DNA from: Salpingoeca rosetta
Taxonomy: Eukaryota > Protista > Choanoflagellata
Length of the DNA: 64,000 bases
Reading direction: 5' to 3'
Assembly: GCA_033442325.1 (NCBI GenBank)
Contig: JAWQFM010000008.1
Coordinates: forward strand, 1,310,123 to 1,374,122
The position numbers and the translations under genes were made by a program. This document shows, in pieces, positions 18,861-36,802 of this stretch. The notes below the pieces were generated by a model. That model was not told where the DNA came from. It saw nothing but the letters and a program-made list of their open reading frames with translations, and did no database searches. Every line of letters starts with the position of its first letter. Position 1 is the first letter of the stretch.

Positions 18861-19067
18861 CCACGGTGCAGCGCACACACACAGGCACAGTTTATGCTTG
18901 TTCTTCCTCGTTGAGCTTGTGTGATGGGTGGATCATGTGTGCAGATAATAAACAGATTCATGCCAATGAATGCAATGAGAAAGAGAAACCAGCGACGAAC
19001 GAAAGGTGCAGTGAAGGACACCGAGCGAAGCGAAGAGACAGAAAAAAAAACACACACGTCCTCCTCA

Positions 19068-21136
19068 CAGAGGATGACATCAGTGAGCGGAAAAAATAAG
19101 TTTTCATCACCGGCACACATTCAAAACCACCCGAAATATGCGTCAATCGCTTCCATTTTCCGTTGGCTGTCCCACGCACAACAGAGAACGAAGACAGCAA
19201 ACCTCAGAGCGCAAGCACAGAACCATCTTTTCCTGTTACCTCCGGGATTGCCGATTATTCACATTGATGCCAACGACTTTCTGCATCCAAGATGGCGCAG
19301 CGCAGATCGGCCACCGCAGCAGGCAGCACTGACGGAACACCGCCGTGTGTCAAGAAGAAAGAAGGCCGATTGTACACCGGGAGCCTTGACAATGAGGAGT
19401 ACGACGCCTTCAAGAAGTGGCTCAAGAAGCAGCGCAAGGAAAACTCCAGGACGCTGACGGTGGACGCAAAGCTGGACATCGTCGCCGTGCAGGCGTACTT
19501 TCGCCATGAGAAGTTTGTCAACGCGAACAAGTCAGGGAGGCCCAAGCAGTATCGGTTCACGGCACTCGCAAAGAACGTCCTTCAGCGCAGCACAGACGTC
19601 TGTCAACAAGCATGGAAGGACTACGAGCGCGCGCAAGCGGTGTCAGTCGCAGACAACGACGGGCCACGCGGGACCAAGACGACGAAGTTCAAGCGCACTG
19701 AGGCATTGCGTGTGAAGCTGCAGAACTGGTTGTACGAGCGCACTGTCAAGGGCAACCGAACTGTGGCAAAGGACGTGCTCGGCTTCTTCTGCTCCTCCGG
19801 TGTGCTGCCGATGTACTCTGATCCCACTTCGAAAGCGAACGCCCTGAGAGCTGTGCAACGATACCTGGAGTCCCTTGGCTACGAGAGAGGTCAGCGAGGC
19901 GGTTGCACCACCTACATGGAGAAGGAGGAGGTGCTGATCAAACGAGACGCGTACATCACCCAGATGATCAAGGCCCGACAGCAGCGGCGACGCATTGTCT
20001 ACCTCGACGAGAGCTACATACACCACCACTACCGCCGGCATGATGAGTCGCTGTACGACCCCGGTGATAACCGCCTGCTCCCCAAGCAAAAGCACAAAGG
20101 CCGGCGCTTCTGTTTCATCGCGGCAATCATCTCAAGCGACCCTGCAGTACCAGAAGCAGAGCGATCCGAGGAACATCGTGCACAGCTGTTACCCGAGACG
20201 CTGGACATCTTTGAGGGGGGCAAGAAGCAGAGTGGCAAGGCGCAGACCAAAGACTACCATGGCATGTTTGACAGTGCGTACTTTGAGCGCTGGATGCAGA
20301 CGCTGCTCGCCACGCTCGACGCCCGTGGCATCAAAAACACCATCATTGTCATGGACAACGCCAAGTACCACAAGTCACTCCCAGCGGACACGCCCAAGCA
20401 ATCATGGAAGAAGGCAGCCATGGTCGAGGCCTGCACGGCGCGCGGCCTGCCAGTATCCGACACCGACACTCGGGCCTTGCTGTGGGCCAGGCTGCGCGAC
20501 CACATTGCACAAACAGTCAAGCCCGTCGTCGTGCAAATGGCAGAGGACGCTGGGCACGAGGTGCTGTGGACACCGCCGCATTACTCCGACCTTCAGCCCA
20601 TCGAGATTGTTTGGGCAAACGTGAAAGGAGACGTTGGTCGACAGTACAACTACGACACAACGTTCAAGGACGTGCGCCAGCGGTTGGACGAGGCGTTTGC
20701 AACCCTGACACCGAAGACAGTTGAGGGATGCATTGCAAAAGCAAATGCTCGGCTGGATGAGCTTTACAGGCAGATCACGAGCCTCGATGAGGTGGATGAG
20801 GAGGCAATCGATGATGGGGTGTTCGATGACGGGCAGCGTGATGATGATGATGAGAATATGGAAGAGGTCGATGTTGTGAACGAGGACAAAGACAAGGACA
20901 GTGACGAGGACAGTGACGAGGACGACGATGAGGGTGAACATGAAGACGAGGATTAGTGTGAGTGGTTTGCCTGTTGTGTGGTTCATTGTGACTTGGTGGG
21001 TGGATGTGGGGTGGGGTGCCGTAGTCAATTGTGCTGAGGGAAAGGGGGTTTTTAGCGTGTTCTCTGTGGTCGAGAACGGCGAAATAAATCGTCAAACACG
21101 TTAATGTGATTTTCCGCTCACTGATGTCATCCTCTG
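19068..21136 (+). mobile_element. Autonomous IS630-Tc1-mariner DNA transposon, DD82E (Sailor-type)
   Basis: Perfect 27-bp TIRs (cagaggatgacatcagtgagcggaaaa at 19068-19094, reverse complement at 21110-21136). Right end is followed by TA. One intronless transposase ORF inside. Confidence 0.93.
19292..20956 (+). CDS. DDE transposase (DD82E), 554 aa, with acidic C-terminal tail
   Basis: IVYLDESY (D1), IIVMDNAKYH (D2), PPHYSDLQPIEIVW (E). I counted 82 residues between D2 and E. Confidence 0.93.
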   Translation: MAQRRSATAAGSTDGTPPCVKKKEGRLYTGSLDNEEYDAFKKWLKKQRKENSRTLTVDAKLDIVAVQAYFRHEKFVNANKSGRPKQYRFTALAKNVLQRSTDVCQQAWKDYERAQAVSVADNDGPRGTKTTKFKRTEALRVKLQNWLYERTVKGNRTVAKDVLGFFCSSGVLPMYSDPTSKANALRAVQRYLESLGYERGQRGGCTTYMEKEEVLIKRDAYITQMIKARQQRRRIVYLDESYIHHHYRRHDESLYDPGDNRLLPKQKHKGRRFCFIAAIISSDPAVPEAERSEEHRAQLLPETLDIFEGGKKQSGKAQTKDYHGMFDSAYFERWMQTLLATLDARGIKNTIIVMDNAKYHKSLPADTPKQSWKKAAMVEACTARGLPVSDTDTRALLWARLRDHIAQTVKPVVVQMAEDAGHEVLWTPPHYSDLQPIEIVWANVKGDVGRQYNYDTTFKDVRQRLDEAFATLTPKTVEGCIAKANARLDELYRQITSLDEVDEEAIDDGVFDDGQRDDDDENMEEVDVVNEDKDKDSDEDSDEDDDEGEHEDED

Positions 21137-21190
21137 TAAGCGCATATGCAAGCGAGGGTACATGACACGTGATGGAGTGCTTGCTTGGCG

Positions 21191-21229
<39 letters not shown>

Positions 21230-21591
21230 TGTGTGGTAGATTCTCTTCTGTGGTCGACGGAATAGTAAATGGCAGTGGTCGTGTATTGATGATGATGATG
21301 ATGATGATGATCTGAACATGTTGCAGATGATGAAACCAACCCGCAGACACACATACACACTAACACACTACACAACACACCCACACCCACACCCACACCC
21401 ACACCCACCCACACACCCACACTCAGACACACTCAGACACCCTCAGACACACGCACTAAACACAACATGGAGCTACGCGGCGGTCCCCTTTGTTTGTTCT
21501 GCGGATGCGAGTATGCGATCCCACTTGACTAACTGGTCCGAGAGGATCAGGACGACGTTGTTGGAGGCCTGCAGCAGCGAAAACACCCGGT

Positions 21592-21691
21592 NNNNNNNNN
21601 NNNNNNNNNNNNNNNNNNNNNNNNNNNNNNNNNNNNNNNNNNNNNNNNNNNNNNNNNNNNNNNNNNNNNNNNNNNNNNNNNNNNNNNNNNN
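21592..21691. other. Assembly gap (100 N)
   Basis: Run of N. Confidence 1.
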
Positions 21692-21744
21692 TCAACTGCA
21701 TCCGCCTCACACGTTCGCTGTCCTACACGACACGCGATGCACAG

Positions 21745-22429
21745 CCTTGCTGAAGAGTGTGTGCAGCAGTTGAAGCAGGGCGAGTCCTTGGAGCAATGCA
21801 AGCAGCTCAAGCACAGGGCGCTGGGTCGCATGGCGACTGTCTTGCATGATCGCAAGTCCTCGCTGGGGTACCTTGAGCAATTGCGGCAGCATTTGTCGCG
21901 TCTGCCTTCGATCGACCCCAACACGCGCACGCTGCTTGTGACGGGCTTCCCGAACGTGGGCAAATCGAGCTTTGTCAACAAGGTGACGCGCGCAGATGTT
22001 GAAGTGCAGCCGTACGTATTTACAACCAAGTCCCTCTTCGTCGGACACACAGACTACCAGTATCTTCGCTGGCAGGTACGCGTCCTCGGCACAAGCATAT
22101 GCACGTACACGTTACGCAGAAGTTGCGCATACACACGTGCATGACAGATCGTGTAGTAGTGCCACCGTTTACCCGGTCCATCTCCTGCAAGCACCACTCA
22201 TTCAAGCTCACACTGCACACAAACGCCCCTGCCATATAGGTGATTGACACACCGGCCATTCTTGACCACCCGCTGGAGCAGCGCAACACGATTGAGATGC
22301 AGGCCATCACGGCGCTTGCGCATCTGCGCGCGTGTGTGCTGTATGTGATGGACCTGAGCCAGCAGTGCGGCTTCACTGTGGAGCAGCAGTTTTCCCTCTT
22401 TGAGAACATCAAGCCCCTCTTTGCAAAGA

Positions 22430-22464
<35 letters not shown>

Positions 22465-23714
22465 CTGGATACGGTTGTGACGAGTAGCTGTGACGTTGGT
22501 GATTGTCGTCGTACTGCTTCCACTTGCCGCTTGCCATCGCGCTCACGCAACCCCCCACCCCACCCCAACCCAATGTTTGCATGTTTGCCACGGCAGCCGC
22601 TGGCGATTATTGTGAACAAGGCTGACACGATGAAGATTGAGGATGCGCCGACGGAGGTGCAGGAGCGGCTGAAGGCGTATGAGGCCGAGGGCATCAGCGT
22701 GCTGAGCATGAGCACGCTCACGGGGGAGGGCGTGGCGCAGGTCAAGAACGCAGCCTGCGACAAGCTCATGACATACCGTATGAAGTCGAAGCTTCAAGCT
22801 ACACCCACGCCACACACAATCGTTTCCAAACCAAAGACTGCCCCCGCCACAACAACTGCAACAACAGCAACAACCGCTAATCTCAGCACCAACAACAACC
22901 CAAACACTAACAACACCAACAACTACGTGACGTCCACACCCAGCGCGTTCGCTCCGAAAACCGACGATGCAGAACTCCCACCCTCCTACGCCGCGCCCAG
23001 CACAACCGACACCACCACGAGGACCAACATCGGCACCGACGCTGACGACTCGGCTGCAGTCCGTGGTCCGTCCACGCTGTGCGTCACACTGCACACGCTG
23101 CGGGACTGTTTGCGCATCTCCACGCTGTGCACGCTGGCGGCTGTGGGCATCCAGCCGCTGTATCACCACTTTGTGACGGGCGTGTGGCCGTGGTCTCAGC
23201 GGGCGTGGTTCGTGGCATCGACGATGGCGGTGCACGAGGTGATGTACTACGGCGTCAACTCGGCCTTCCTGCTCATGGACCGCTTTGGCATCTGCAGCAA
23301 GCACAAGATTGACCGAGGCAGCACGCCAGAGCCATCGCGCGCACTCATTGCCAAGACGCTGCGCAAGAGTGCTGTGTCGCACTGGGTCATCCAGCCCATC
23401 TCGCTGTACGCGCTGTTTCCGCTCTTCCTGCGTATGGGCATGGATGTTGCGGGCCCGCCGGCAGCAGGGGCGCTTGTGCCGATGATGTGTCGGTTTGGCT
23501 TCAGCGTGCTTGTCAACGACGCCTTGTTCTACTGGACGCACCGCCTCCTGCACATGCCGCAGCTGTACGCCCGCTTCCACAAGCAGCACCACGAATACAA
23601 AGGTTCGGCAAAGGCGGTGCAAGGCTGCCCGAAAGCTGCCCCTGTTGTGGTTTTCATGCTTCTACATGTGTGCGTTTGTGTCTGTCTGTGTGTCTGTGCG
23701 TGTGTGTGTGTGTG

Positions 23715-23756
<42 letters not shown>

Positions 23757-23757
23757 A

Positions 23758-23788
<31 letters not shown>

Positions 23789-24648
23789 ACTGTCTGTCTG
23801 TCTGTCTGTCTGTCTCTGTCTCTGTGTGTCTGTGTCCGACCTTTGTCTGCGGGAGCTTAACGTTCGTCATCCGGTATATTCACATGCGCGTTTCTTTGCC
23901 ATCTCACCCCACACCGCTGCCCCCTCCCCCAACCCTTGTGCACCGCCAGCCACCACGGGCTTTGCTGCGGAATACGCGAGCCCCCTGGAGCAGCTACTCA
24001 GCAACCAGGTGAGGGGACACGGTGGTGCGGTTTTGGCTGCGCTGGCGTGCAAATGAAGAGTGCGTTTGTTTGCTTGTTTTGTAGTTTGTTCATCTGAATT
24101 GGTCCATTCCACCGATAACACACGCATACACGTGCGCCCACCACGTACCACGCATTCATCTCTGTGCGACATGACTCCTTTCGCACAGCTGCCTGTGGTT
24201 GTCGGCCCTCTGCTGTGCCGTATGACCACAACAGAGTGGCTTGTCTTCCTCGTCTGGCGTCTCTGGCGCACATATGAAGACCACAGGTGTGGCATCGCGC
24301 TTTGCATATTTTTTTTTTCACACGGCACACCCCACCGGCTTTCTGTACTGCACCAACAACCCTGCTGCTGGCCGTTTATCTTTTGCTCTTCGCACGTTCT
24401 GCCTTGTGTTCAATTGCACATTTTCCATGCGCATGTACAATCAACTGTGCATGCACCGCTCGTGCATTCTCTCCTACACGTACCACTTTCATGCGTGGTG
24501 CTCACCGCCACTGGTTTTTTTTTTTTTTTTTGCTTGCATGCAGCGGGTACGACTTTCACAACACGTTCCTGGGCCGCCTCGGCTTGTCGCACGGCTACAG
24601 TGCCATCTACCACGATTTTCATCACTCACACAACCTCGGGAACTTCGG

Positions 24649-24679
<31 letters not shown>

Positions 24680-25018
24680 GATGCAGAAGCACGAGGGACG
24701 GATGATTTAGGAGCAGAGACGCACACAAACATGCACACAGTAACATGCTTGAGCAATGGCACTGCTAATTTGATTGATTGCATCGTACATTGCTTGGTTT
24801 ATTTCTTTTCGTCTTCGGAAACATCACTCACACTCGCACACTCACACATCTACGCCCACACACGCATACACGCACATGCGTGCGCACATGTACCCCTGCT
24901 TGCGCCATCAGGACCCGCCAATGCGTTCTGGGATCACATTGGCGGCACACAGGACGCGTACTTGCGGTACATTCGTCGAAACAACATCCCATCCTACCAC
25001 ACCCCATACCTCTTTTGA
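21745..25018 (+). CDS. Chimeric gene: duplicated NOG1 GTPase domain fused to an ERG25/methylsterol-monooxygenase-like fatty-acid-hydroxylase-family oxidase (5' end hidden by the gap)
   Basis: Exons 21745-22075, 22240-22431 and 22597-23602 encode NOG1 G1 (GFPNVGKSS), G3 (DTPA) and G4 (NKAD). The same exon then continues through a T/N-rich linker into [25 protein letters not shown]. Later exons give [32 protein letters not shown] and FWDHIGGT, with stop at 25018. Confidence 0.75.
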
Positions 25019-25030
25019 TCCCCAACGCGT

Positions 25031-25094
<64 letters not shown>

Positions 25095-25576
25095 TCAAAC
25101 ACATTCACGTGTGCTTCCATCGTGTCAGCTCTTGCTTGTGTTAAATTCTCCCCTGCCTCTGCTTCGCGCTCGTGGGTGTTGTCACCTGACCGACATGACA
25201 GCAGTTCGTTCTTTCAGTTACCAGTGCGCTACAGCCCTCGCTGCCTCATTCGCGTCATTGTGCCTCCTCTCGCGTGCTTGTCTTGAGTGTTGCTCTGTAT
25301 GTTACATTGCTTGCTGGAATGCGTTGCTTAATCGCCGCTGATACGTGCAAACCAAGCTGGTCACCAAAATACACACGCTGAACAAGAACACGCACTTCAA
25401 TTACGCCACATACAGAACTGGTGGCGAGCAACGCAAGGCTACACGCAAAACCTCGCTCGCGCTTGCGCTTGCACCTGTGCTGGTCTGCTGGTATGGCCAC
25501 GGTGCTGCTCGCAACCACGATTTCGTATGGGGTGTCGCTGAATGTTTGCTTCATGGCATTGCCTTTATCACTCTCT

Positions 25577-28027
<2,451 letters not shown>

Positions 28028-28502
28028 CTTCTATTCGTTGTGTTGAGGCAGATGGATGATGGCTGTCCTTGATGATGTTTGTGTTATGCAACAACAACTT
28101 GCTTCGCACTCTCCTCAACAGCTTCGCAGGGTCACCCTCGCTACTGCAACTTCAAGGACGTTCGCTTTGTTGGCGCTGACTGGAGTTGCAGTTGCCTGTG
28201 ACACTGTTGCTTTCATCATCATCAGAAGTGTAGTCCTGCCGCGTAAAATTGCTTCGTCAGCGAATTCACAAATGGCAAATTTTTGACATTGTACATTTCT
28301 CAACAAATGAGCTAGTTCCTGTATTTTTCCGCTTCCCGCACATCTCACGCTTCACCCACGTGCACCGCACGCTGCCTTTTTTTCCATTCTCACACACGCA
28401 CACGCACACGCACACGCACACGCACACAACCTCACGTGTGCACCAACCAACCCTTCACGCGGATACCCACACGCGACCACTACAACTACAAGACCGGCCA
28501 CC

Positions 28503-33766
<5,264 letters not shown>

Positions 33767-34147: not shown

Positions 34148-34148
<1 letters not shown>

Positions 34149-34602
34149 CAGGAGAGGCCTGCCTCTGCTTGCTCTACCGCAGCCAGCATGGCTGACAAAT
34201 AATCATCATCATCATCCTCATCATGCTCCTCATCATTGTCGACCTTGCTGCGCTTGTGCGCGTGTGGGTCTTCTGTTGTCGTGGCGCCTGATGGCTGCCG
34301 GTCCTGTTCTTGGGGTAGCGGCGGCCTCTTGACCACGGCCACTTCCGGGTTGGTTAAGAAGCAATCGTCGTCGTCGCCATCACTATCCAGCGTCACCACC
34401 ACAGCCGCCTTCTTGCTCCCTTGGCTTGCTGCCCCGTGGTTCGACCCTTTGCCCGTGCCCTCTGCTGGAAATGCCTGTTTGTCCCTCTTCTCCCTTTTTG
34501 CTGGCCTCATTCCTCCCTCTGTCTCAAAGAACGACAGCAAATCTCGCTGCCCAACTTCCCTCTGCTCACCCCTACCATCATCATCATCATCACCACTATC
34601 AC

Positions 34603-34646
<44 letters not shown>

Positions 34647-36802
34647 CCACCACTGTCACCATCGCCACCTTTGTTCTTGTTCTTGTTCTTGTTCTTCTTC
34701 TTCCCGCTTTTCTTCTTGGTTTTGCGCGTGTCCGTGCGTTCGGCTCCCATGGTCTCCGATGCGCCCTTGACCGCCCTGCCCACCACCGCCATCTTGCGCT
34801 CCACCTTCTCCCACATGCTCTCGTCCAGCGTGTTGCGGCAAATCAGGTACTTGACGTCCACGGCGCACTGCTGGCCCACGCGGTGCGCCCTGTCCTCTGC
34901 CTGCAGCAGCTGCCCCGGGTTCCAGAACAGCTCTGCAAACACAACCAGCGTCGCAGCGTGCAGCGTGAGGCCCGTGCCTGCGGCGGTGATGCTGAGTAGG
35001 GCCACGCGGCACGTCTCGTCCGTCTGAAAGCGGGTGGCCAGCTCATTACGTAGCGACGATGGTGTGGACCCGTCAATGCGCACGTGTCGGATGCTCTTTT
35101 CGCACAGCGCCTGCATCAGCCCGTCCATCACGGGCTGGTGGTGCGCAAACAGCAGCATCTTCACCCCTTTCGCCAGCTGCTCCAGCACATATGTCACGCA
35201 TGCGGCCAGCTTGGCCTGCCCCGTGGCCTGGAACAGCTTGAGCGTGACGCCGTGCATCTCGCCGTCACCACGACCAGCGGCGACAGCAGCGGCGTCCATG
35301 TGGAAGCGTTTCTTCATGAGCTGCGAGATTTCGCGGCGGTGCTTGGCCGAGCAGTCAACAACGACCGTCTGCCGTGTTTTTGGCGGGAGCGAGGACAGCA
35401 CGCCCTTCTTGTCGCGCCGAATCATCACCGTGCGCTGCAGCAGCGTGTGCAGCTCCTCCTCGTTGCTGGAGCCGTCGTGGCACCACCCGTACGCGGTCAT
35501 GTGTGAGTTGCAGTATCGCTCACCAAACGCAATCTCCACGCGGAAGAGGTCGCGGCGCAGCGCGCGCAGCTGCTGGAACAGCTCAATCGGCTTGGAGAGG
35601 GCTGGGGTGCCGGAGAGCAGGAGGGCGCGCTTGGCGTCCTGCACCACGGGCACGAGCGCCTTTGTGCGGGCCGCCTGCCTGTTCTTGATGTAGTGGGCCT
35701 CGTCGGCGATGACGACGCGGAACTTGCGCTGCTGCACCTGCGTGCGCAGCCCGCGCGCCAGGTCGTAGCTGAGGATGCACACGGCGTGCGTGAGCTTCTC
35801 GCGCCCATTCTGCACAACTTGCACCGCGTCCTCGCCCAGGCCAAGCCAGCGGTGGATCTCGTTCGCCCACGTCAGCTTCAGGCTGCTCGGGCACACGATG
35901 AGCAGGGGCCACTCGCTGCGGTAGTGCAGAGCCGTGACCAGCGCCTGCACGGTCTTGCCCAGCCCCATTTCATCGCACCACAGGATGCGCCCGGAGCGCC
36001 GCACCGCACACAGCACGCCCGTCAGCTGGTACGGCAGCAGCTTCTGCAGCAGCTCCAGCGGCACGCGGCCCTGCAGGGCCTCGTACGCCTGCTCCGGAGT
36101 CACGGTGGAGTGCAGCAGTTCGAGCGTGTTCCACGTGGACGAGTGCATGGCTGCCAGCACCCATTTCGGCAGGCCCGTGATGCGCGTCTCAACGGCGGTG
36201 AGCTCGTGCAGCTTCGTCAGCAGCGTCTTGTACATGCGCAGCGGCAGGACCCAGCCCGAGACGGGGGTGCGATCCCGATCATATGTGCCGCCAAGGCCCC
36301 GCACCACGGCGTTCACTTCCGTGCTGAAGGGCTGCACGACAACGAGTATTTCTCGGCACGACTTGAGCAGCGACACCACCACCTTGATTTGGCCAAACGC
36401 GCGCACGCCACCCGTCCCACGCGACGCAGCTGATGACGATGACGAAGACGATGACGAAGACGAAGACGAAGACTTGAATGGTTTCCTCGAGGGTGGCATG
36501 GCGGATCTGCCACGATGGCTGTTGGAGGATGTGTTTGGTGCAAACGGCAGCGTGCGCTGCCTCTGTTGCTTTGCCGTCGATGAGCTGGATGATGATGCTG
36601 CTGCTGATGATGATGACGATGATGATGATGATGTGTGGCGAGCGCTGGTGGAGACAAACTTGTCGATCCTTGGCGCTGCGGCGCCAATGTTGCTATTGCT
36701 GGTTTGGTTGCTGCTCATGCTACTATGTCTGCTGGTGCTGGTGCTGGTGGTCGGCCGCCTGTCGAATGCCGCCACAGGCCGCTTCCTGCCGCTATTGTGC
36801 AT
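34148..36802 (-). CDS. SMARCAL1: SNF2-family annealing helicase, SMARCAL1-like (single exon, 884 aa)
   Basis: LLPYQ..G..DEMGLGKTVQAL, WPLLIVCPSSL, DEAHYIKN, LLSGTPALSKPIELF, RIDGSTP, LSITAAGTGLTL, ELFWNPG.LLQAEDRAHRVGQ. A HARP-like segment precedes the ATPase domain. No ZRANB3-type HNH or zinc finger is visible. Confidence 0.85.

What the first reader, a model, noticed from the sequence alone, without database searches (positions are those of the whole stretch)
21745..25018. Chimeric gene: NOG1 GTPase domain fused to an ERG25-like sterol oxidase
Seen: a second copy of the NOG1 helical/G-domain exons sits about 8-9 kb upstream of the matching exons of intact NOG1. Similarity ends at YRMKSK (parent YRIESK, about 22790). 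The frame continues without a stop or intron through a T/N-rich linker (containing a PPSY motif) into a complete di-iron oxidase with HRLLH, HKQHH and HDFHH boxes. The oxidase part has no ATG between 22783 and 23224. The ATG at 23224 lies just before the conserved HE..Y motif, so the oxidase probably needs NOG1-derived sequence to start. Established: NOG1 is a nucleolar 60S-assembly GTPase, and ERG25/MSMO1-family enzymes are ER-membrane sterol oxidases. I know of no natural fusion of the two. Inference: a lineage-specific, membrane-tethered nucleotide-binding module attached to a sterol or lipid enzyme, possibly coupling sterol synthesis to GTP or ribosome status.
Basis: partly seen in the sequence, partly recalled or inferred. 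Interest (0 to 1): 0.92.

Follow-up and report, generated by a model that had tools for sequence, protein, structure and literature searches.

The report
Expressed NOG1–lipid oxidase chimeric gene
In the choanoflagellate Salpingoeca rosetta, a partial copy of the ribosome-assembly GTPase gene NOG1 is fused in frame to a membrane lipid/sterol oxidase gene and is transcribed as one mRNA; it looks like a one-species gene born by duplication, whose GTPase half is decaying, rather than a new regulatory machine.

Summary
Window 21745-25018 (+) is one seven-exon reading frame. Its 5' part copies NOG1 exons (NOG1_N tail, MMR_HSR1, NOG1 domain). A 93-residue T/A/P/N-rich linker then leads into a complete FA_hydroxylase oxidase. 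It is already deposited as S. rosetta XP_004995906.1, "GTP binding protein 4", 635 aa, but I found no paper on it.

Stranded RNA reads cover the copy-specific NOG1 exon, the linker and the oxidase at similar depth. No splice or transcript start lies between them. The fusion mRNA is about as abundant as NOG1 mRNA.

New here: the annotated ATG (21737) is intronic. The first visible exon is spliced to an exon identical to the end of NOG1 exon 3, so the 5' exons and promoter must lie in the gap at 21592-21691. The predicted protein is about 742 aa.

The duplicate is old (dS about 0.76) but is patched by gene conversion. Unconverted parts evolve almost neutrally. The G3 motif reads DTPA, the same change as the dominant-negative Nog1 G223A.

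The oxidase stands alone in seven other choanoflagellates, and no other such fusion turned up in 1.8 billion cluster representatives.

Best reading: a lineage-specific chimera in which the oxidase took over NOG1's promoter and N-terminus. GTP-regulated catalysis is possible but unsupported.

The parts
21592..21691 (.). Assembly gap (100 N). Inferred to hide the 5' exons (equivalents of NOG1 exons 1-3) and the promoter of the chimeric gene.
   Evidence: Ten X21 reads and one X9 contig that lie on copy-specific sequence from 21745 onward carry, before it, 30 letters identical to window 29192-29221, the end of NOG1 exon 3. NOG1 exons 1-3 occur only once in the 55.4-Mb assembly.
21745..22075 (+). 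First visible exon, a copy of NOG1 exon 4. It encodes the tail of the NOG1 N-terminal helical domain, the P-loop GFPNVGKS (21944-21967) and the G2 threonines. 21751-21881 is old and diverged (39 mismatches); 21882-22078 is a conversion tract (4 mismatches).
   Evidence: Pfam NOG1_N and MMR_HSR1. Mismatch map. Copy-specific RNA: X21 13x, and an X9 contig over 21745-21911 with 0 differences. The annotated ATG at 21737 lies upstream of the acceptor, in sequence with about 0.4x coverage.
22076..22239 (+). Intron, 164 nt. It cannot be aligned with the parental intron, which is 630 nt (30399-31028).
   Evidence: Alignment. The joint 22075/22240 appears in 7 stranded reads. DNA contig X1 over 22033-22290 has 0 differences.
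22240..22431 (+). Exon, a copy of NOG1 exon 5. The G3/switch II motif reads DTPA instead of DTPG (Ala codon at 22255-22257), followed by the Pfam NOG1 domain. 22237-22260 is old (7 mismatches); 22261-22432 is identical to the parent.
   Evidence: The equivalent yeast G223A and human G224A changes are dominant negative (PMC6968927).
22432..22596 (+). Intron, 165 nt. It is identical to the parental intron except for 12 extra bases of (GT)n.
   Evidence: RNA depth is 0 here, while DNA run X1 covers it.
22597..22791 (+). NOG1-derived start of the long exon: G4 NKAD (22615-22626) through to YRMKSK. It corresponds to human GTPBP4 residues of about 283-347.
   Evidence: Copy-specific letters at 22651, 22722 and 22724 are seen in 16/36, 9/23 and 9/23 stranded RNA reads.
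22792..23070 (+). Linker of 93 residues (24 T, 14 A, 11 P, 10 N), including PPSY. It has no homologue anywhere and no in-frame ATG or stop.
   Evidence: Continuous plus-strand RNA at 27-40x with no joint and no pile of read starts.
23067..23602 (+). First half of the oxidase: the conserved N-terminal helices, then His boxes HRLLH (23539-23553) and HKQHH (23578-23592).
   Evidence: Alignment with eight orthologues. Pfam FA_hydroxylase.
23950..24008 (+). Oxidase exon.
   Evidence: Joints 23602/23950 and 24008/24189 in RNA reads and contigs. Model.
24189..24286 (+). Oxidase exon, ending in EDH of the EDHSGY motif.
24544..24650 (+). Oxidase exon carrying the third His box, HDFHH (24611-24625).
   Evidence: Loose ends at 24910 show splicing from 24650.
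24912..25018 (+). Last coding exon. Its C-terminus, PSYHTPYLF, is conserved in orthologues. Stop codon at 25016-25018.
25019..25300 (+). 3' UTR, reaching at least the end of the stretch that was laid.
   Evidence: Plus-strand RNA at 28-34x.
28503..33766 (+). Parental, intact NOG1 gene. Exons 30068-30398, 31029-31220 and 31374 onward are the source or partner of the copy. Exon 3 is 29107-29225.
   Evidence: Parental mRNA contig X4 record 10.

Best explanation
This is a real, expressed, species-specific chimeric gene of Salpingoeca rosetta.

Origin: a partial duplicate of NOG1 came to lie directly upstream of a FAXDC2/MSMO1-like membrane oxidase gene. The duplicate runs from the promoter and 5' exons to a breakpoint inside the exon that ends the G domain. 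The oxidase has no start codon of its own.

Product: the locus is transcribed from a NOG1-type promoter hidden in the assembly gap. It is spliced into one mRNA and should give a protein of about 742 aa with four parts:
- the NOG1 N-terminal helical domain;
- the G domain;
- a 93-residue disordered linker;
- a multi-pass di-iron oxidase.

Inferred function: the oxidase is the selected, working part. The NOG1 half mainly supplies the promoter, the start codon and a cytosolic N-terminal appendage. That ties oxidase expression to a ribosome-biogenesis promoter. As a GTPase it is degenerating: its G3 glycine has become alanine, and it evolves near-neutrally wherever gene conversion from NOG1 has not overwritten it.

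Shown: the anatomy, the single transcript, the missing 5' end, the mosaic divergence and the uniqueness of the fusion. Inferred: the content of the gap, translation of the whole frame, the protein's location and which half is functional.
For: Anatomy and annotation:
- The model equals the deposited XP_004995906.1.

Single transcript (stranded raw RNA run X21):
- Copy-specific exon 13x, linker 27-40x, oxidase exons 8-34x, all on the same strand.
- No joint and no cluster of read starts inside 22597-23602.
- Sequence just upstream of 21745 has about 0.4x.
- In RNA contigs of X9, copy-specific pieces have equal depth: 1498 for 21745-21911, 2099 for the linker and 2128 for the oxidase.

Abundance: at diagnostic sites, 35 of 77 reads carry the copy's letters. 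The fusion mRNA is therefore at roughly 0.8 times NOG1 mRNA, as expected from a duplicated NOG1 promoter.

5' end:
- Spliced reads join 21745 to a sequence identical to NOG1 exon 3.
- Those exons are single-copy in the assembly.
- With them the frame stays open for 742 aa.

Assembly is sound: DNA contigs from a 2022 run reproduce the copy-specific letters, the copy-specific intron and the stretch 22752-23666 with 0-1 differences.

Age and conversion:
- 39 mismatches in 131 nt and 7 in 24 nt, against 0-4 in tracts of 172-197 nt.
- One intron is identical and the other cannot be aligned.
- dS is 0.76 in the old segments and 0.033 in the converted ones.

Decay of the NOG1 part:
- dN is 0.245-0.28 in the old segments.
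- All 18 changes there arose in the copy, 12 of them at sites that human GTPBP4 shares with the parent.
- DTPG has become DTPA, the known dominant-negative change (PMC6968927).

Oxidase intact and needs the upstream frame:
- All three His boxes and the C-terminal motif are conserved.
- The eight orthologues start 5-35 residues before the first conserved helix, where this gene has no ATG.

Lineage-specific:
- The oxidase stands alone in Barroeca monosierra, Monosiga brevicollis and five choanoflagellate transcriptomes.
- There is no second fusion among 1.84 billion representatives.
Against: - The 5' exons and promoter have not been seen. Only about 30 nt of the upstream exon are read, and they are identical to the parent.
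- No long read or contig spans from the copy-specific exon to the oxidase, because 31-mer contigs break in the tracts shared with NOG1. Linkage therefore rests on equal depth, continuous short-read coverage and the absence of alternatives.
- There is no protein evidence.
- The near-neutral estimate rests on only 55 unconverted codons.
- The frame of the NOG1 part has stayed open, and its P-loop, G2 and G4 motifs are intact, so a retained nucleotide-binding role cannot be excluded.
- A G3 Gly-to-Ala GTPase can still bind GTP.
- X21 coverage drops about four-fold at around 23016 within the long exon. I put this down to stray reads on the low-complexity linker, but I did not test that.
Confidence: 0.6

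Rival explanations
1. Functional module. The NOG1-derived G domain is a working nucleotide-binding, and possibly GTP-locked, regulatory or scaffolding domain tethered to the ER by the oxidase. It would couple lipid or sterol oxidation to GTP level or to ribosome or pre-60S contacts.
For: - The frame has stayed open over at least 240 visible NOG1-derived codons. G1 (GFPNVGKS), the G2 threonines and G4 (NKAD) are intact.
- The duplicate is old (dS about 0.76), yet it is still expressed at NOG1-like level.
- N-terminal soluble domains fused to FA_hydroxylase enzymes do exist elsewhere, for example the bacterial FAD/NAD-binding fusions.
- A Gly-to-Ala change in G3 gives a stable, release-defective state rather than an unfolded protein (PMC6968927).
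Against: - The conserved look comes from gene conversion: identity includes an intron, and dS is 0.033 in the tracts.
- Where there has been no conversion, 18 of 47 residues differ. All 18 changes arose in the copy, 12 of them at sites that human GTPBP4 shares with the parent.
- The catalytic switch II glycine is lost.
- The C-terminal tail that anchors Nog1 to Rlp24 and the exit tunnel is absent. Nog1 1-426 is non-functional in yeast.
- The fusion occurs in one species only.
Confidence: 0.17
2. Non-productive or decaying locus. The fusion mRNA is made, but the long protein is unstable, mislocalised or inactive. Either the oxidase is made from an internal start (ATG 23224 or a non-AUG codon), or the gene is on its way to loss.
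For: - No protein evidence exists.
- A soluble domain of about 440 residues ahead of the first membrane helix is unusual for this family, whose orthologues have 5-35 residues there.
- The genome has at least seven other FA_hydroxylase loci that might cover the function.
- Two conserved histidines next to the boxes are changed (HRLLHH to HRLLHM and HGH to HGY).
- Introns are partly retained.
Against: - All seven exons, the splice sites, the three His boxes and the C-terminal motif have stayed intact over a time in which silent sites of the duplicate reached dS about 0.76.
- Starting at 23224 would remove the two conserved N-terminal helices.
- mRNA level is high and splicing is mostly complete.
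Confidence: 0.15
3. The upstream exon is not in the gap. The chimeric mRNA would acquire NOG1 exons 1-3 from the single NOG1 gene 7 kb downstream, by trans-splicing or by a different true gene order.
For: - The 30 nt that were read are identical to the parental exon.
- No second copy of those exons is in the assembly.
Against: - The contig 21692-43576 is continuous and puts the copy upstream of NOG1, so cis-splicing from the parent is impossible.
- Nearly every read entering 21745 is spliced this way (10 reads at 13x depth). That would be extraordinary for trans-splicing.
- A near-identical repeat is exactly what leaves an assembly gap.
Confidence: 0.05
4. Assembly artefact: the NOG1-like segment was wrongly joined to the oxidase gene.
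For: - A scaffold gap lies 54 bp upstream of the first visible exon.
- The region carries a young transposon and another duplicated fragment.
Against: - The copy differs from NOG1 at 60 sites and has its own intron, so it is not a collapsed repeat.
- The junction at 22782-22792 lies inside continuous sequence. A DNA contig from a 2022 run (22752-23666) covers it, overlapped by a copy-specific contig at 22472-22781. Stranded RNA reads cover it continuously.
Confidence: 0.03

Closest known systems
Chimeric genes created by partial (tandem) gene duplication with capture of a neighbour's promoter and 5' exons, as catalogued for example in Drosophila yakuba (PMC5460883, seen)
   Same: - A fragment running from a parental gene's 5' end to a breakpoint within an exon is joined in frame to another gene nearby on the same strand.
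- The recipient gene is then expressed under the donor's regulation.
- It is restricted to one species.
   Different: - This one is old enough to reach dS about 0.76.
- It is kept partly identical to its parent by gene conversion.
- Its upstream half is not in the assembly.
- The duplication mechanism (tandem or dispersed) could not be determined, because no second copy of the oxidase or of the intervening gene was found.
NOG1 / GTPBP4 (Obg-family nucleolar GTPase of pre-60S particles; PDB 6lss chain 4, 3jct chain b)
   Same: The visible NOG1-derived part aligns to human residues 110 to about 347 at E = 4.5e-50 for the first exon alone. It carries the NOG1_N tail, the MMR_HSR1 G domain and the Pfam NOG1 motif.
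   Different: - It lacks everything after about residue 347, including the C-terminal tail with the Rlp24-binding and tunnel-inserting parts.
- G3 reads DTPA, the dominant-negative change G223A in yeast and G224A in human.
- It has 18 derived substitutions in 47 unconverted residues.
- It is fused to a membrane enzyme.
FAXDC2 and MSMO1/ERG25 (C4-methyl sterol oxidases of the FA_hydroxylase superfamily; PMC10940096)
   Same: - Pfam FA_hydroxylase at 7.5e-22.
- His-box pattern HX3H, HX2HH, HX2HH, followed by a GN(F/Y)G...WD...GT tail.
- The best structural cluster is FAXDC2, with TM-score 0.76 over residues 356-632. The feature-based neighbours are FAXDC2 and plant MSMO1-like clusters.
   Different: - Only about 30% identity to any named member.
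- It belongs to a clade made up mostly of uncharacterised protist proteins, including standalone choanoflagellate orthologues of 272-346 aa.
- The substrate is untested, and orthology to ERG25 is not established.
- No solved structure matches by sequence.
FA2H/Scs7-type and bacterial reductase-fused FA_hydroxylases, which carry a soluble domain fused N-terminally to the membrane oxidase
   Same: The architecture is a soluble cytosolic domain, then a linker, then the FA_hydroxylase membrane domain. Bacterial FAD/NAD-binding fusions appeared among the structural neighbours. The cytochrome b5 fusion of FA2H is from my own knowledge.
   Different: In those enzymes the fused domain is the electron donor, which gives the fusion an obvious mechanistic reason. 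A ribosome-assembly GTPase has no known link to di-iron oxidase chemistry.

Membership tests
FA_hydroxylase superfamily (Pfam PF04116) | Profile match above the curated cut-off | tested here: met
   78.6 bits against a cut-off of 31, covering residues 480-613 of P0194.
FA_hydroxylase superfamily (Pfam PF04116) | Three histidine boxes (HX3-4H, HX2-3HH, HX2-3HH) that bind the di-iron centre | tested here: met
   HRLLH, HKQHH and HDFHH are present and align with the eight orthologues. Two neighbouring non-box histidines are substituted (HRLLHM, HGY).
FA_hydroxylase superfamily (Pfam PF04116) | Oxidase or hydroxylase activity on a lipid substrate | not testable with these tools
   Needs an enzyme assay or complementation.
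ERG25 / MSMO1 (C4-methyl sterol oxidase) orthologue | Closer to characterised ERG25/MSMO1 than to other FA_hydroxylase subfamilies (reciprocal best hit or clade membership) | tested here: inconclusive
   The nearest named relatives are FAXDC2 and MSMO1-like at about 30% identity. The genome holds at least eight other FA_hydroxylase loci. No trusted ERG25 reference sequence was available for a tree.
NOG1 / GTPBP4 | NOG1_N helical domain, an Obg-type G domain and the NOG1 motif | tested here: met
   PF17835 3e-9 (tail only in the visible part), PF01926 2.5e-15, PF06858 3.6e-27. Human GTPBP4 at 4.5e-50.
NOG1 / GTPBP4 | Intact G1-G4 motifs, including the DxxG glycine of switch II | tested here: not met
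   G1, G2 and G4 are intact, but G3 reads DTPA (codon 22255-22257). The parent and human GTPBP4 have DTPG.
NOG1 / GTPBP4 | C-terminal NOGCT region and tail that binds Rlp24 and enters the exit tunnel | tested here: not met
   Similarity to NOG1 ends at 22782-22792, about residue 347. The rest of the protein is linker and oxidase.
Chimeric gene by partial duplication | A paralogous fragment with an identifiable intact parent, and a breakpoint inside a parental exon | tested here: met
   The parent at 28503-33766 is intact and expressed.
Chimeric gene by partial duplication | Both parts present in one mature transcript | tested here: met
   - Short reads of one strand cover the long exon continuously across the NOG1/linker/oxidase boundaries.
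- Copy-specific pieces have equal depth.
- No internal start or joint was seen.
- Caveat: no single molecule spanning from 21745 to 25018 was seen.
Chimeric gene by partial duplication | Absence of the fusion in outgroups | tested here: met
   Standalone orthologues exist in Barroeca monosierra, Monosiga brevicollis and five transcriptomes. No other fusion was found.

The most novel reading that the evidence does not exclude
The ER-tethered NOG1 half, with its natural switch II Gly-to-Ala change (a 'locked' Obg-type G domain), is a selected functional module. It might be a GTP sensor, or a dock for ribosomal or pre-60S partners, that controls a sterol or lipid oxidase. That would link membrane lipid chemistry directly to growth status. 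It would also be the first GTPase-fused FA_hydroxylase.
Probability: 0.15. Interest if true: 0.75.

Novelty: new member of a known kind. Interest (0 to 1): 0.45.

Why it matters
- It is a clean, expressed example of gene birth by partial duplication in the closest living relatives of animals. The parent gene is known, an outgroup lacks the fusion, and the copy is a visible mosaic of old divergence and recent gene conversion.
- It corrects a public annotation. XP_004995906.1 is misnamed "GTP binding protein 4", its start codon is intronic, and its true 5' end lies in an assembly gap.
- S. rosetta is genetically tractable. The locus therefore offers a natural experiment on whether a truncated NOG1 carrying the classical dominant-negative switch II change is harmless, useful or toxic when tethered to a membrane enzyme and expressed at NOG1-like level.
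- Anyone counting NOG1 genes, mapping NOG1 RNA-seq reads or knocking out NOG1 in this organism must allow for the near-identical tracts.
- If the rival reading were right, it would be a new type of regulated lipid oxidase.

Tried and rejected
- **Search for the missing 5' exons.** A DNA search with window 28400-30100 and profile searches with PF17835 and PF06858 found only the parental exons and the known copy. The missing exons are therefore not elsewhere in the assembly.
- **Test of a full tandem-duplication model.** I looked for a second copy of the oxidase and of the gene between it and NOG1. None was found, only dispersed short repeats, so the mechanism stays open.
- **Is the sequence left of the gap (21275-21591) part of the gene?** No. 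It is a 97% reverse copy of a fragment on contig C2. The RNA reads there carry C2's letter and C2's splice.
- **Is the transposon at 19064-21137 involved?** Its copies are 98-100% identical, so it inserted long after the duplication. I rejected it as a cause.
- **ERG25 orthology by tblastn against the genome's paralogues.** Uninformative, because the only 'methylsterol monooxygenase' name available was an automatic label on a metagenome protein.
- **Solved structures for the oxidase.** None matched by sequence.
- **Earlier findings of the scan.** Nothing was held.
- **Papers naming the accession numbers.** None.
- **Pfam on the neighbouring minus-strand ORFs at 25577-28027.** No family matched, so I leave that gene unnamed.
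- **Steps not run.** I made no structure prediction or complex prediction, because no claim here depends on one.
- DNA depth over NOG1 exons 1-3, which would have shown a hidden second copy, could therefore not be measured.


Full report
**What is in the sequence.**

The window is from Salpingoeca rosetta (contig C8 of a 55.4-Mb assembly). Between 21745 and 25018 on the plus strand, seven GT..AG exons form one open frame.

That frame is letter for letter the deposited protein XP_004995906.1 / EGD82670.1 / F2U4V4, "GTP binding protein 4", 635 aa (P0194). Pfam finds these domains on it:
- NOG1_N (tail only), 3e-9
- MMR_HSR1, 2.5e-15
- NOG1, 3.6e-27
- FA_hydroxylase, 7.5e-22

The intact NOG1 gene lies at 28503-33766 on the same strand. 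BLASTN and alignments show that 21773-22078 and 22230-22791 copy NOG1 at 30096-30401 and 31019-31568. Similarity stops at 22782-22792, inside a NOG1 exon (YRMKSK in the copy, YRIESK in the parent).

Downstream, the same exon runs on through 93 codons rich in T, A, P and N, including PPSY. No protein anywhere resembles this stretch. The exon then enters the oxidase. The coding frame of this linker has no stop and no ATG. The other two frames have one and three stops, and the only ATG (22967) is out of frame.

**The oxidase.**

Eight relatives were recovered: Barroeca monosierra, Monosiga brevicollis MONBRDRAFT_27469, five choanoflagellate transcriptome proteins and Logan-derived proteins. All are standalone proteins of 272-346 aa. 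Each begins with a methionine 5-35 residues before the first conserved helix (LRDC.RIS). At that place the window reads ...[12 protein letters not shown] with no methionine.

The three histidine boxes (HRLLH, HKQHH, HDFHH), EDHSGY and the C-terminal PSYHTPYLF are conserved. The next in-frame ATG (23224) would remove the two conserved N-terminal helices.

The nearest named clusters are FAXDC2 and MSMO1-like proteins. FAXDC2 gives a structure TM-score of 0.76 over residues 356-632. Sequence identity to any named protein is only about 30%. FAXDC2 is an experimentally shown C4-methyl sterol oxidase and a paralogue of MSMO1 (PMC10940096).

So 'ERG25-like' is fair at family level. Orthology and substrate are not established, and the genome has at least eight further FA_hydroxylase loci.

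**Transcription.**

One stranded raw-read RNA run (X21), two sets of RNA contigs (X4, X9) and one set of DNA contigs (X1, from 2022) were laid on 21000-25300 at 97% likeness or better.

- Coverage of the gene is on one strand only.
- The diverged 5' part of the first visible exon can only come from the copy, because the parent is about 70% identical there. It has 13x in X21, and an X9 contig covers 21745-21911 without a difference.
- The linker has 27-40x and the oxidase exons 8-34x.
- In X9 the copy-specific pieces have equal contig depth: 1498, 2099 and 2128.
- Introns 22076-22239, 23603-23949 and 24009-24188 are seen as joints. Loose ends give the others.
- No joint and no cluster of read starts lies within 22597-23602.
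- At the five sites that tell copy from parent inside the near-identical tracts (22017/22018, 22651, 22722/22724), 35 of 77 reads carry the copy's letters. The chimeric mRNA is thus about as abundant as NOG1 mRNA.

The DNA contigs reproduce the copy's own letters and its own intron. They tile 21882-23666 with k-1 overlaps, so the locus is not an assembly chimera.

**The 5' end is missing from the assembly.**

Ten X21 reads and one X9 contig that lie on copy-specific sequence from 21745 carry, in front of it, 30 letters found only once in the window: at 29192-29221, the end of NOG1 exon 3. The next four bases and the intron phase also fit. Sequence just upstream of 21745, including the annotated ATG at 21737, has about 0.4x coverage against 13x in the exon. 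So that ATG is intronic, and nearly all transcripts carry an upstream NOG1-type exon.

The contig 21692-43576 is continuous and places the copy upstream of NOG1. The exon therefore cannot be the parental one spliced in cis. NOG1 exons 1-3 occur once in the assembly.

The simplest explanation is that near-identical copies of exons 1-3, with their promoter, lie in the 100-N gap at 21592-21691. A near-identical repeat would also explain why the assembler left a gap there. With the parental exons as stand-ins the frame is open for 742 codons. This step is inference.

**History.**

The copy is a mosaic:
- 21751-21881 has 39 mismatches in 131 nt.
- 21882-22078 has 4.
- The following intron cannot be aligned (164 nt against 630 nt).
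- 22237-22260 has 7 mismatches.
- 22261-22432 and 22462-22650 have none, and the second of these includes most of an intron.
- 22651-22781 has 3.

In the old segments dS is 0.76 and dN 0.245. In the others dS is 0.033. This is the signature of an old duplication repeatedly patched by gene conversion with its neighbour 8 kb away.

In the unconverted 47 codons of the helical domain, 18 residues differ. In every case the parent keeps either the state shared with human GTPBP4 or a conservative variant, while the copy is derived. With dS split between the two lineages, this gives a dN/dS near 0.9 on the copy's branch, from few sites.

The only non-synonymous change in the second old island turns the G3 motif DTPG into DTPA. 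The same substitution in yeast Nog1 (G223A) and human Nog1 (G224A) is dominant negative and blocks release from pre-60S particles (PMC6968927).

The copy also lacks everything after about residue 347, including the tail that binds Rlp24. A yeast Nog1 1-426 truncation is non-functional (same paper).

By contrast, the oxidase half has kept seven exons, all boxes and its C-terminal motif over the same period.

**How it most likely works.**

*Shown:* one promoter-distal to stop-codon transcript, NOG1-like abundance, an intact oxidase without its own start, and a degenerate switch II.

*Inferred:*
- Transcription starts at a duplicated NOG1 promoter.
- Translation starts at the NOG1 ATG.
- The first hydrophobic helices of the oxidase act as signal anchors. 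This leaves about 440 residues (helical domain, G domain, linker) in the cytosol, on the side where this enzyme family carries its di-iron site.
- The oxidase works as in its standalone relatives.
- The NOG1 half is mainly a carrier of promoter and start codon. It slowly decays except where conversion refreshes it, and membrane tethering and loss of the tail keep it away from pre-60S particles.

One consequence is that the oxidase is now expressed like a ribosome-biogenesis gene.

I put 0.6 on this reading. The alternatives are:
- 0.17 on a selected nucleotide-binding module;
- 0.15 on a non-productive or decaying product;
- 0.05 on an unconventional source of the upstream exon;
- 0.03 on an artefact.

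**Novelty.**

No other protein combines the NOG1 G domain with FA_hydroxylase among 1.84 billion cluster representatives. All 150 best hits were 113-450 aa and matched one half only. Among candidates of 250-794 aa in the 5.8-billion set, the only such hit is this protein itself.

No paper names its accessions. The protein is thus deposited but undescribed and mis-annotated. As a kind of thing it is familiar: a chimeric gene born by partial duplication with capture of a 5' end. I therefore rate it a new member of a known kind, of moderate interest. The tractable host and the natural dominant-negative-type substitution raise that interest. Restriction to one species and the signs of decay in the GTPase half lower it.

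The stretch given to read laying was 4301 letters.

Noticed in passing
window 19064-21137: A 2074-bp DNA transposon with an intact 554-aa DDE_3 transposase ORF (19292-20956, Pfam 1.1e-14). At least five other copies at 98-100% identity lie on contigs C11, C2, C22, C1 and C6. RNA reads at its right end (21137) run on into different flanks. It is probably recently or currently active in S. rosetta.
   Followed up: partly
window 21275-21591 and L026:3051-3366 (G000:C2:1819050-1819365): The 317 bp that abut the left side of the gap are a 97% reverse copy of a fragment on contig C2. RNA reads laid there carry C2's letter at 21564 and a C2 splice. They therefore come from the C2 gene, and this fragment is probably a silent duplicated piece. 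The neighbourhood is a patchwork of duplicated fragments.
   Followed up: partly
window 23217: The window reads A here, but all four runs, including the DNA run, read G. The change is synonymous (GCA to GCG). It is either a reference error or a difference between culture lines.
   Followed up: no
window 24287-24543 and 24651-24911: These two oxidase introns are partly retained in RNA: 5-9x in X21 against 8-34x in the exons, and low-depth intron contigs appear in X4.
   Followed up: no
window 30399-31028: The parental NOG1 intron is 630 nt against 164 nt in the copy. It contains an internal direct repeat of about 55 nt (...CCTGACTAATTCCTTGATGACAAACCC...), suggesting an insertion or local duplication after the gene duplication.
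   Followed up: no
window about 26250-26400 and 27110-27275: Two stretches of about 150 nt match more than 100 places across the genome at 80-94% identity, often in both orientations. They are either a dispersed short repeat or microsatellite-rich sequence.
   Followed up: no
window 34148-36802 (-): An intronless 884-aa ORF with SNF2-related and Helicase_C domains (7.4e-34 and 5.1e-17). It has long serine and acidic low-complexity tails.
   Followed up: no
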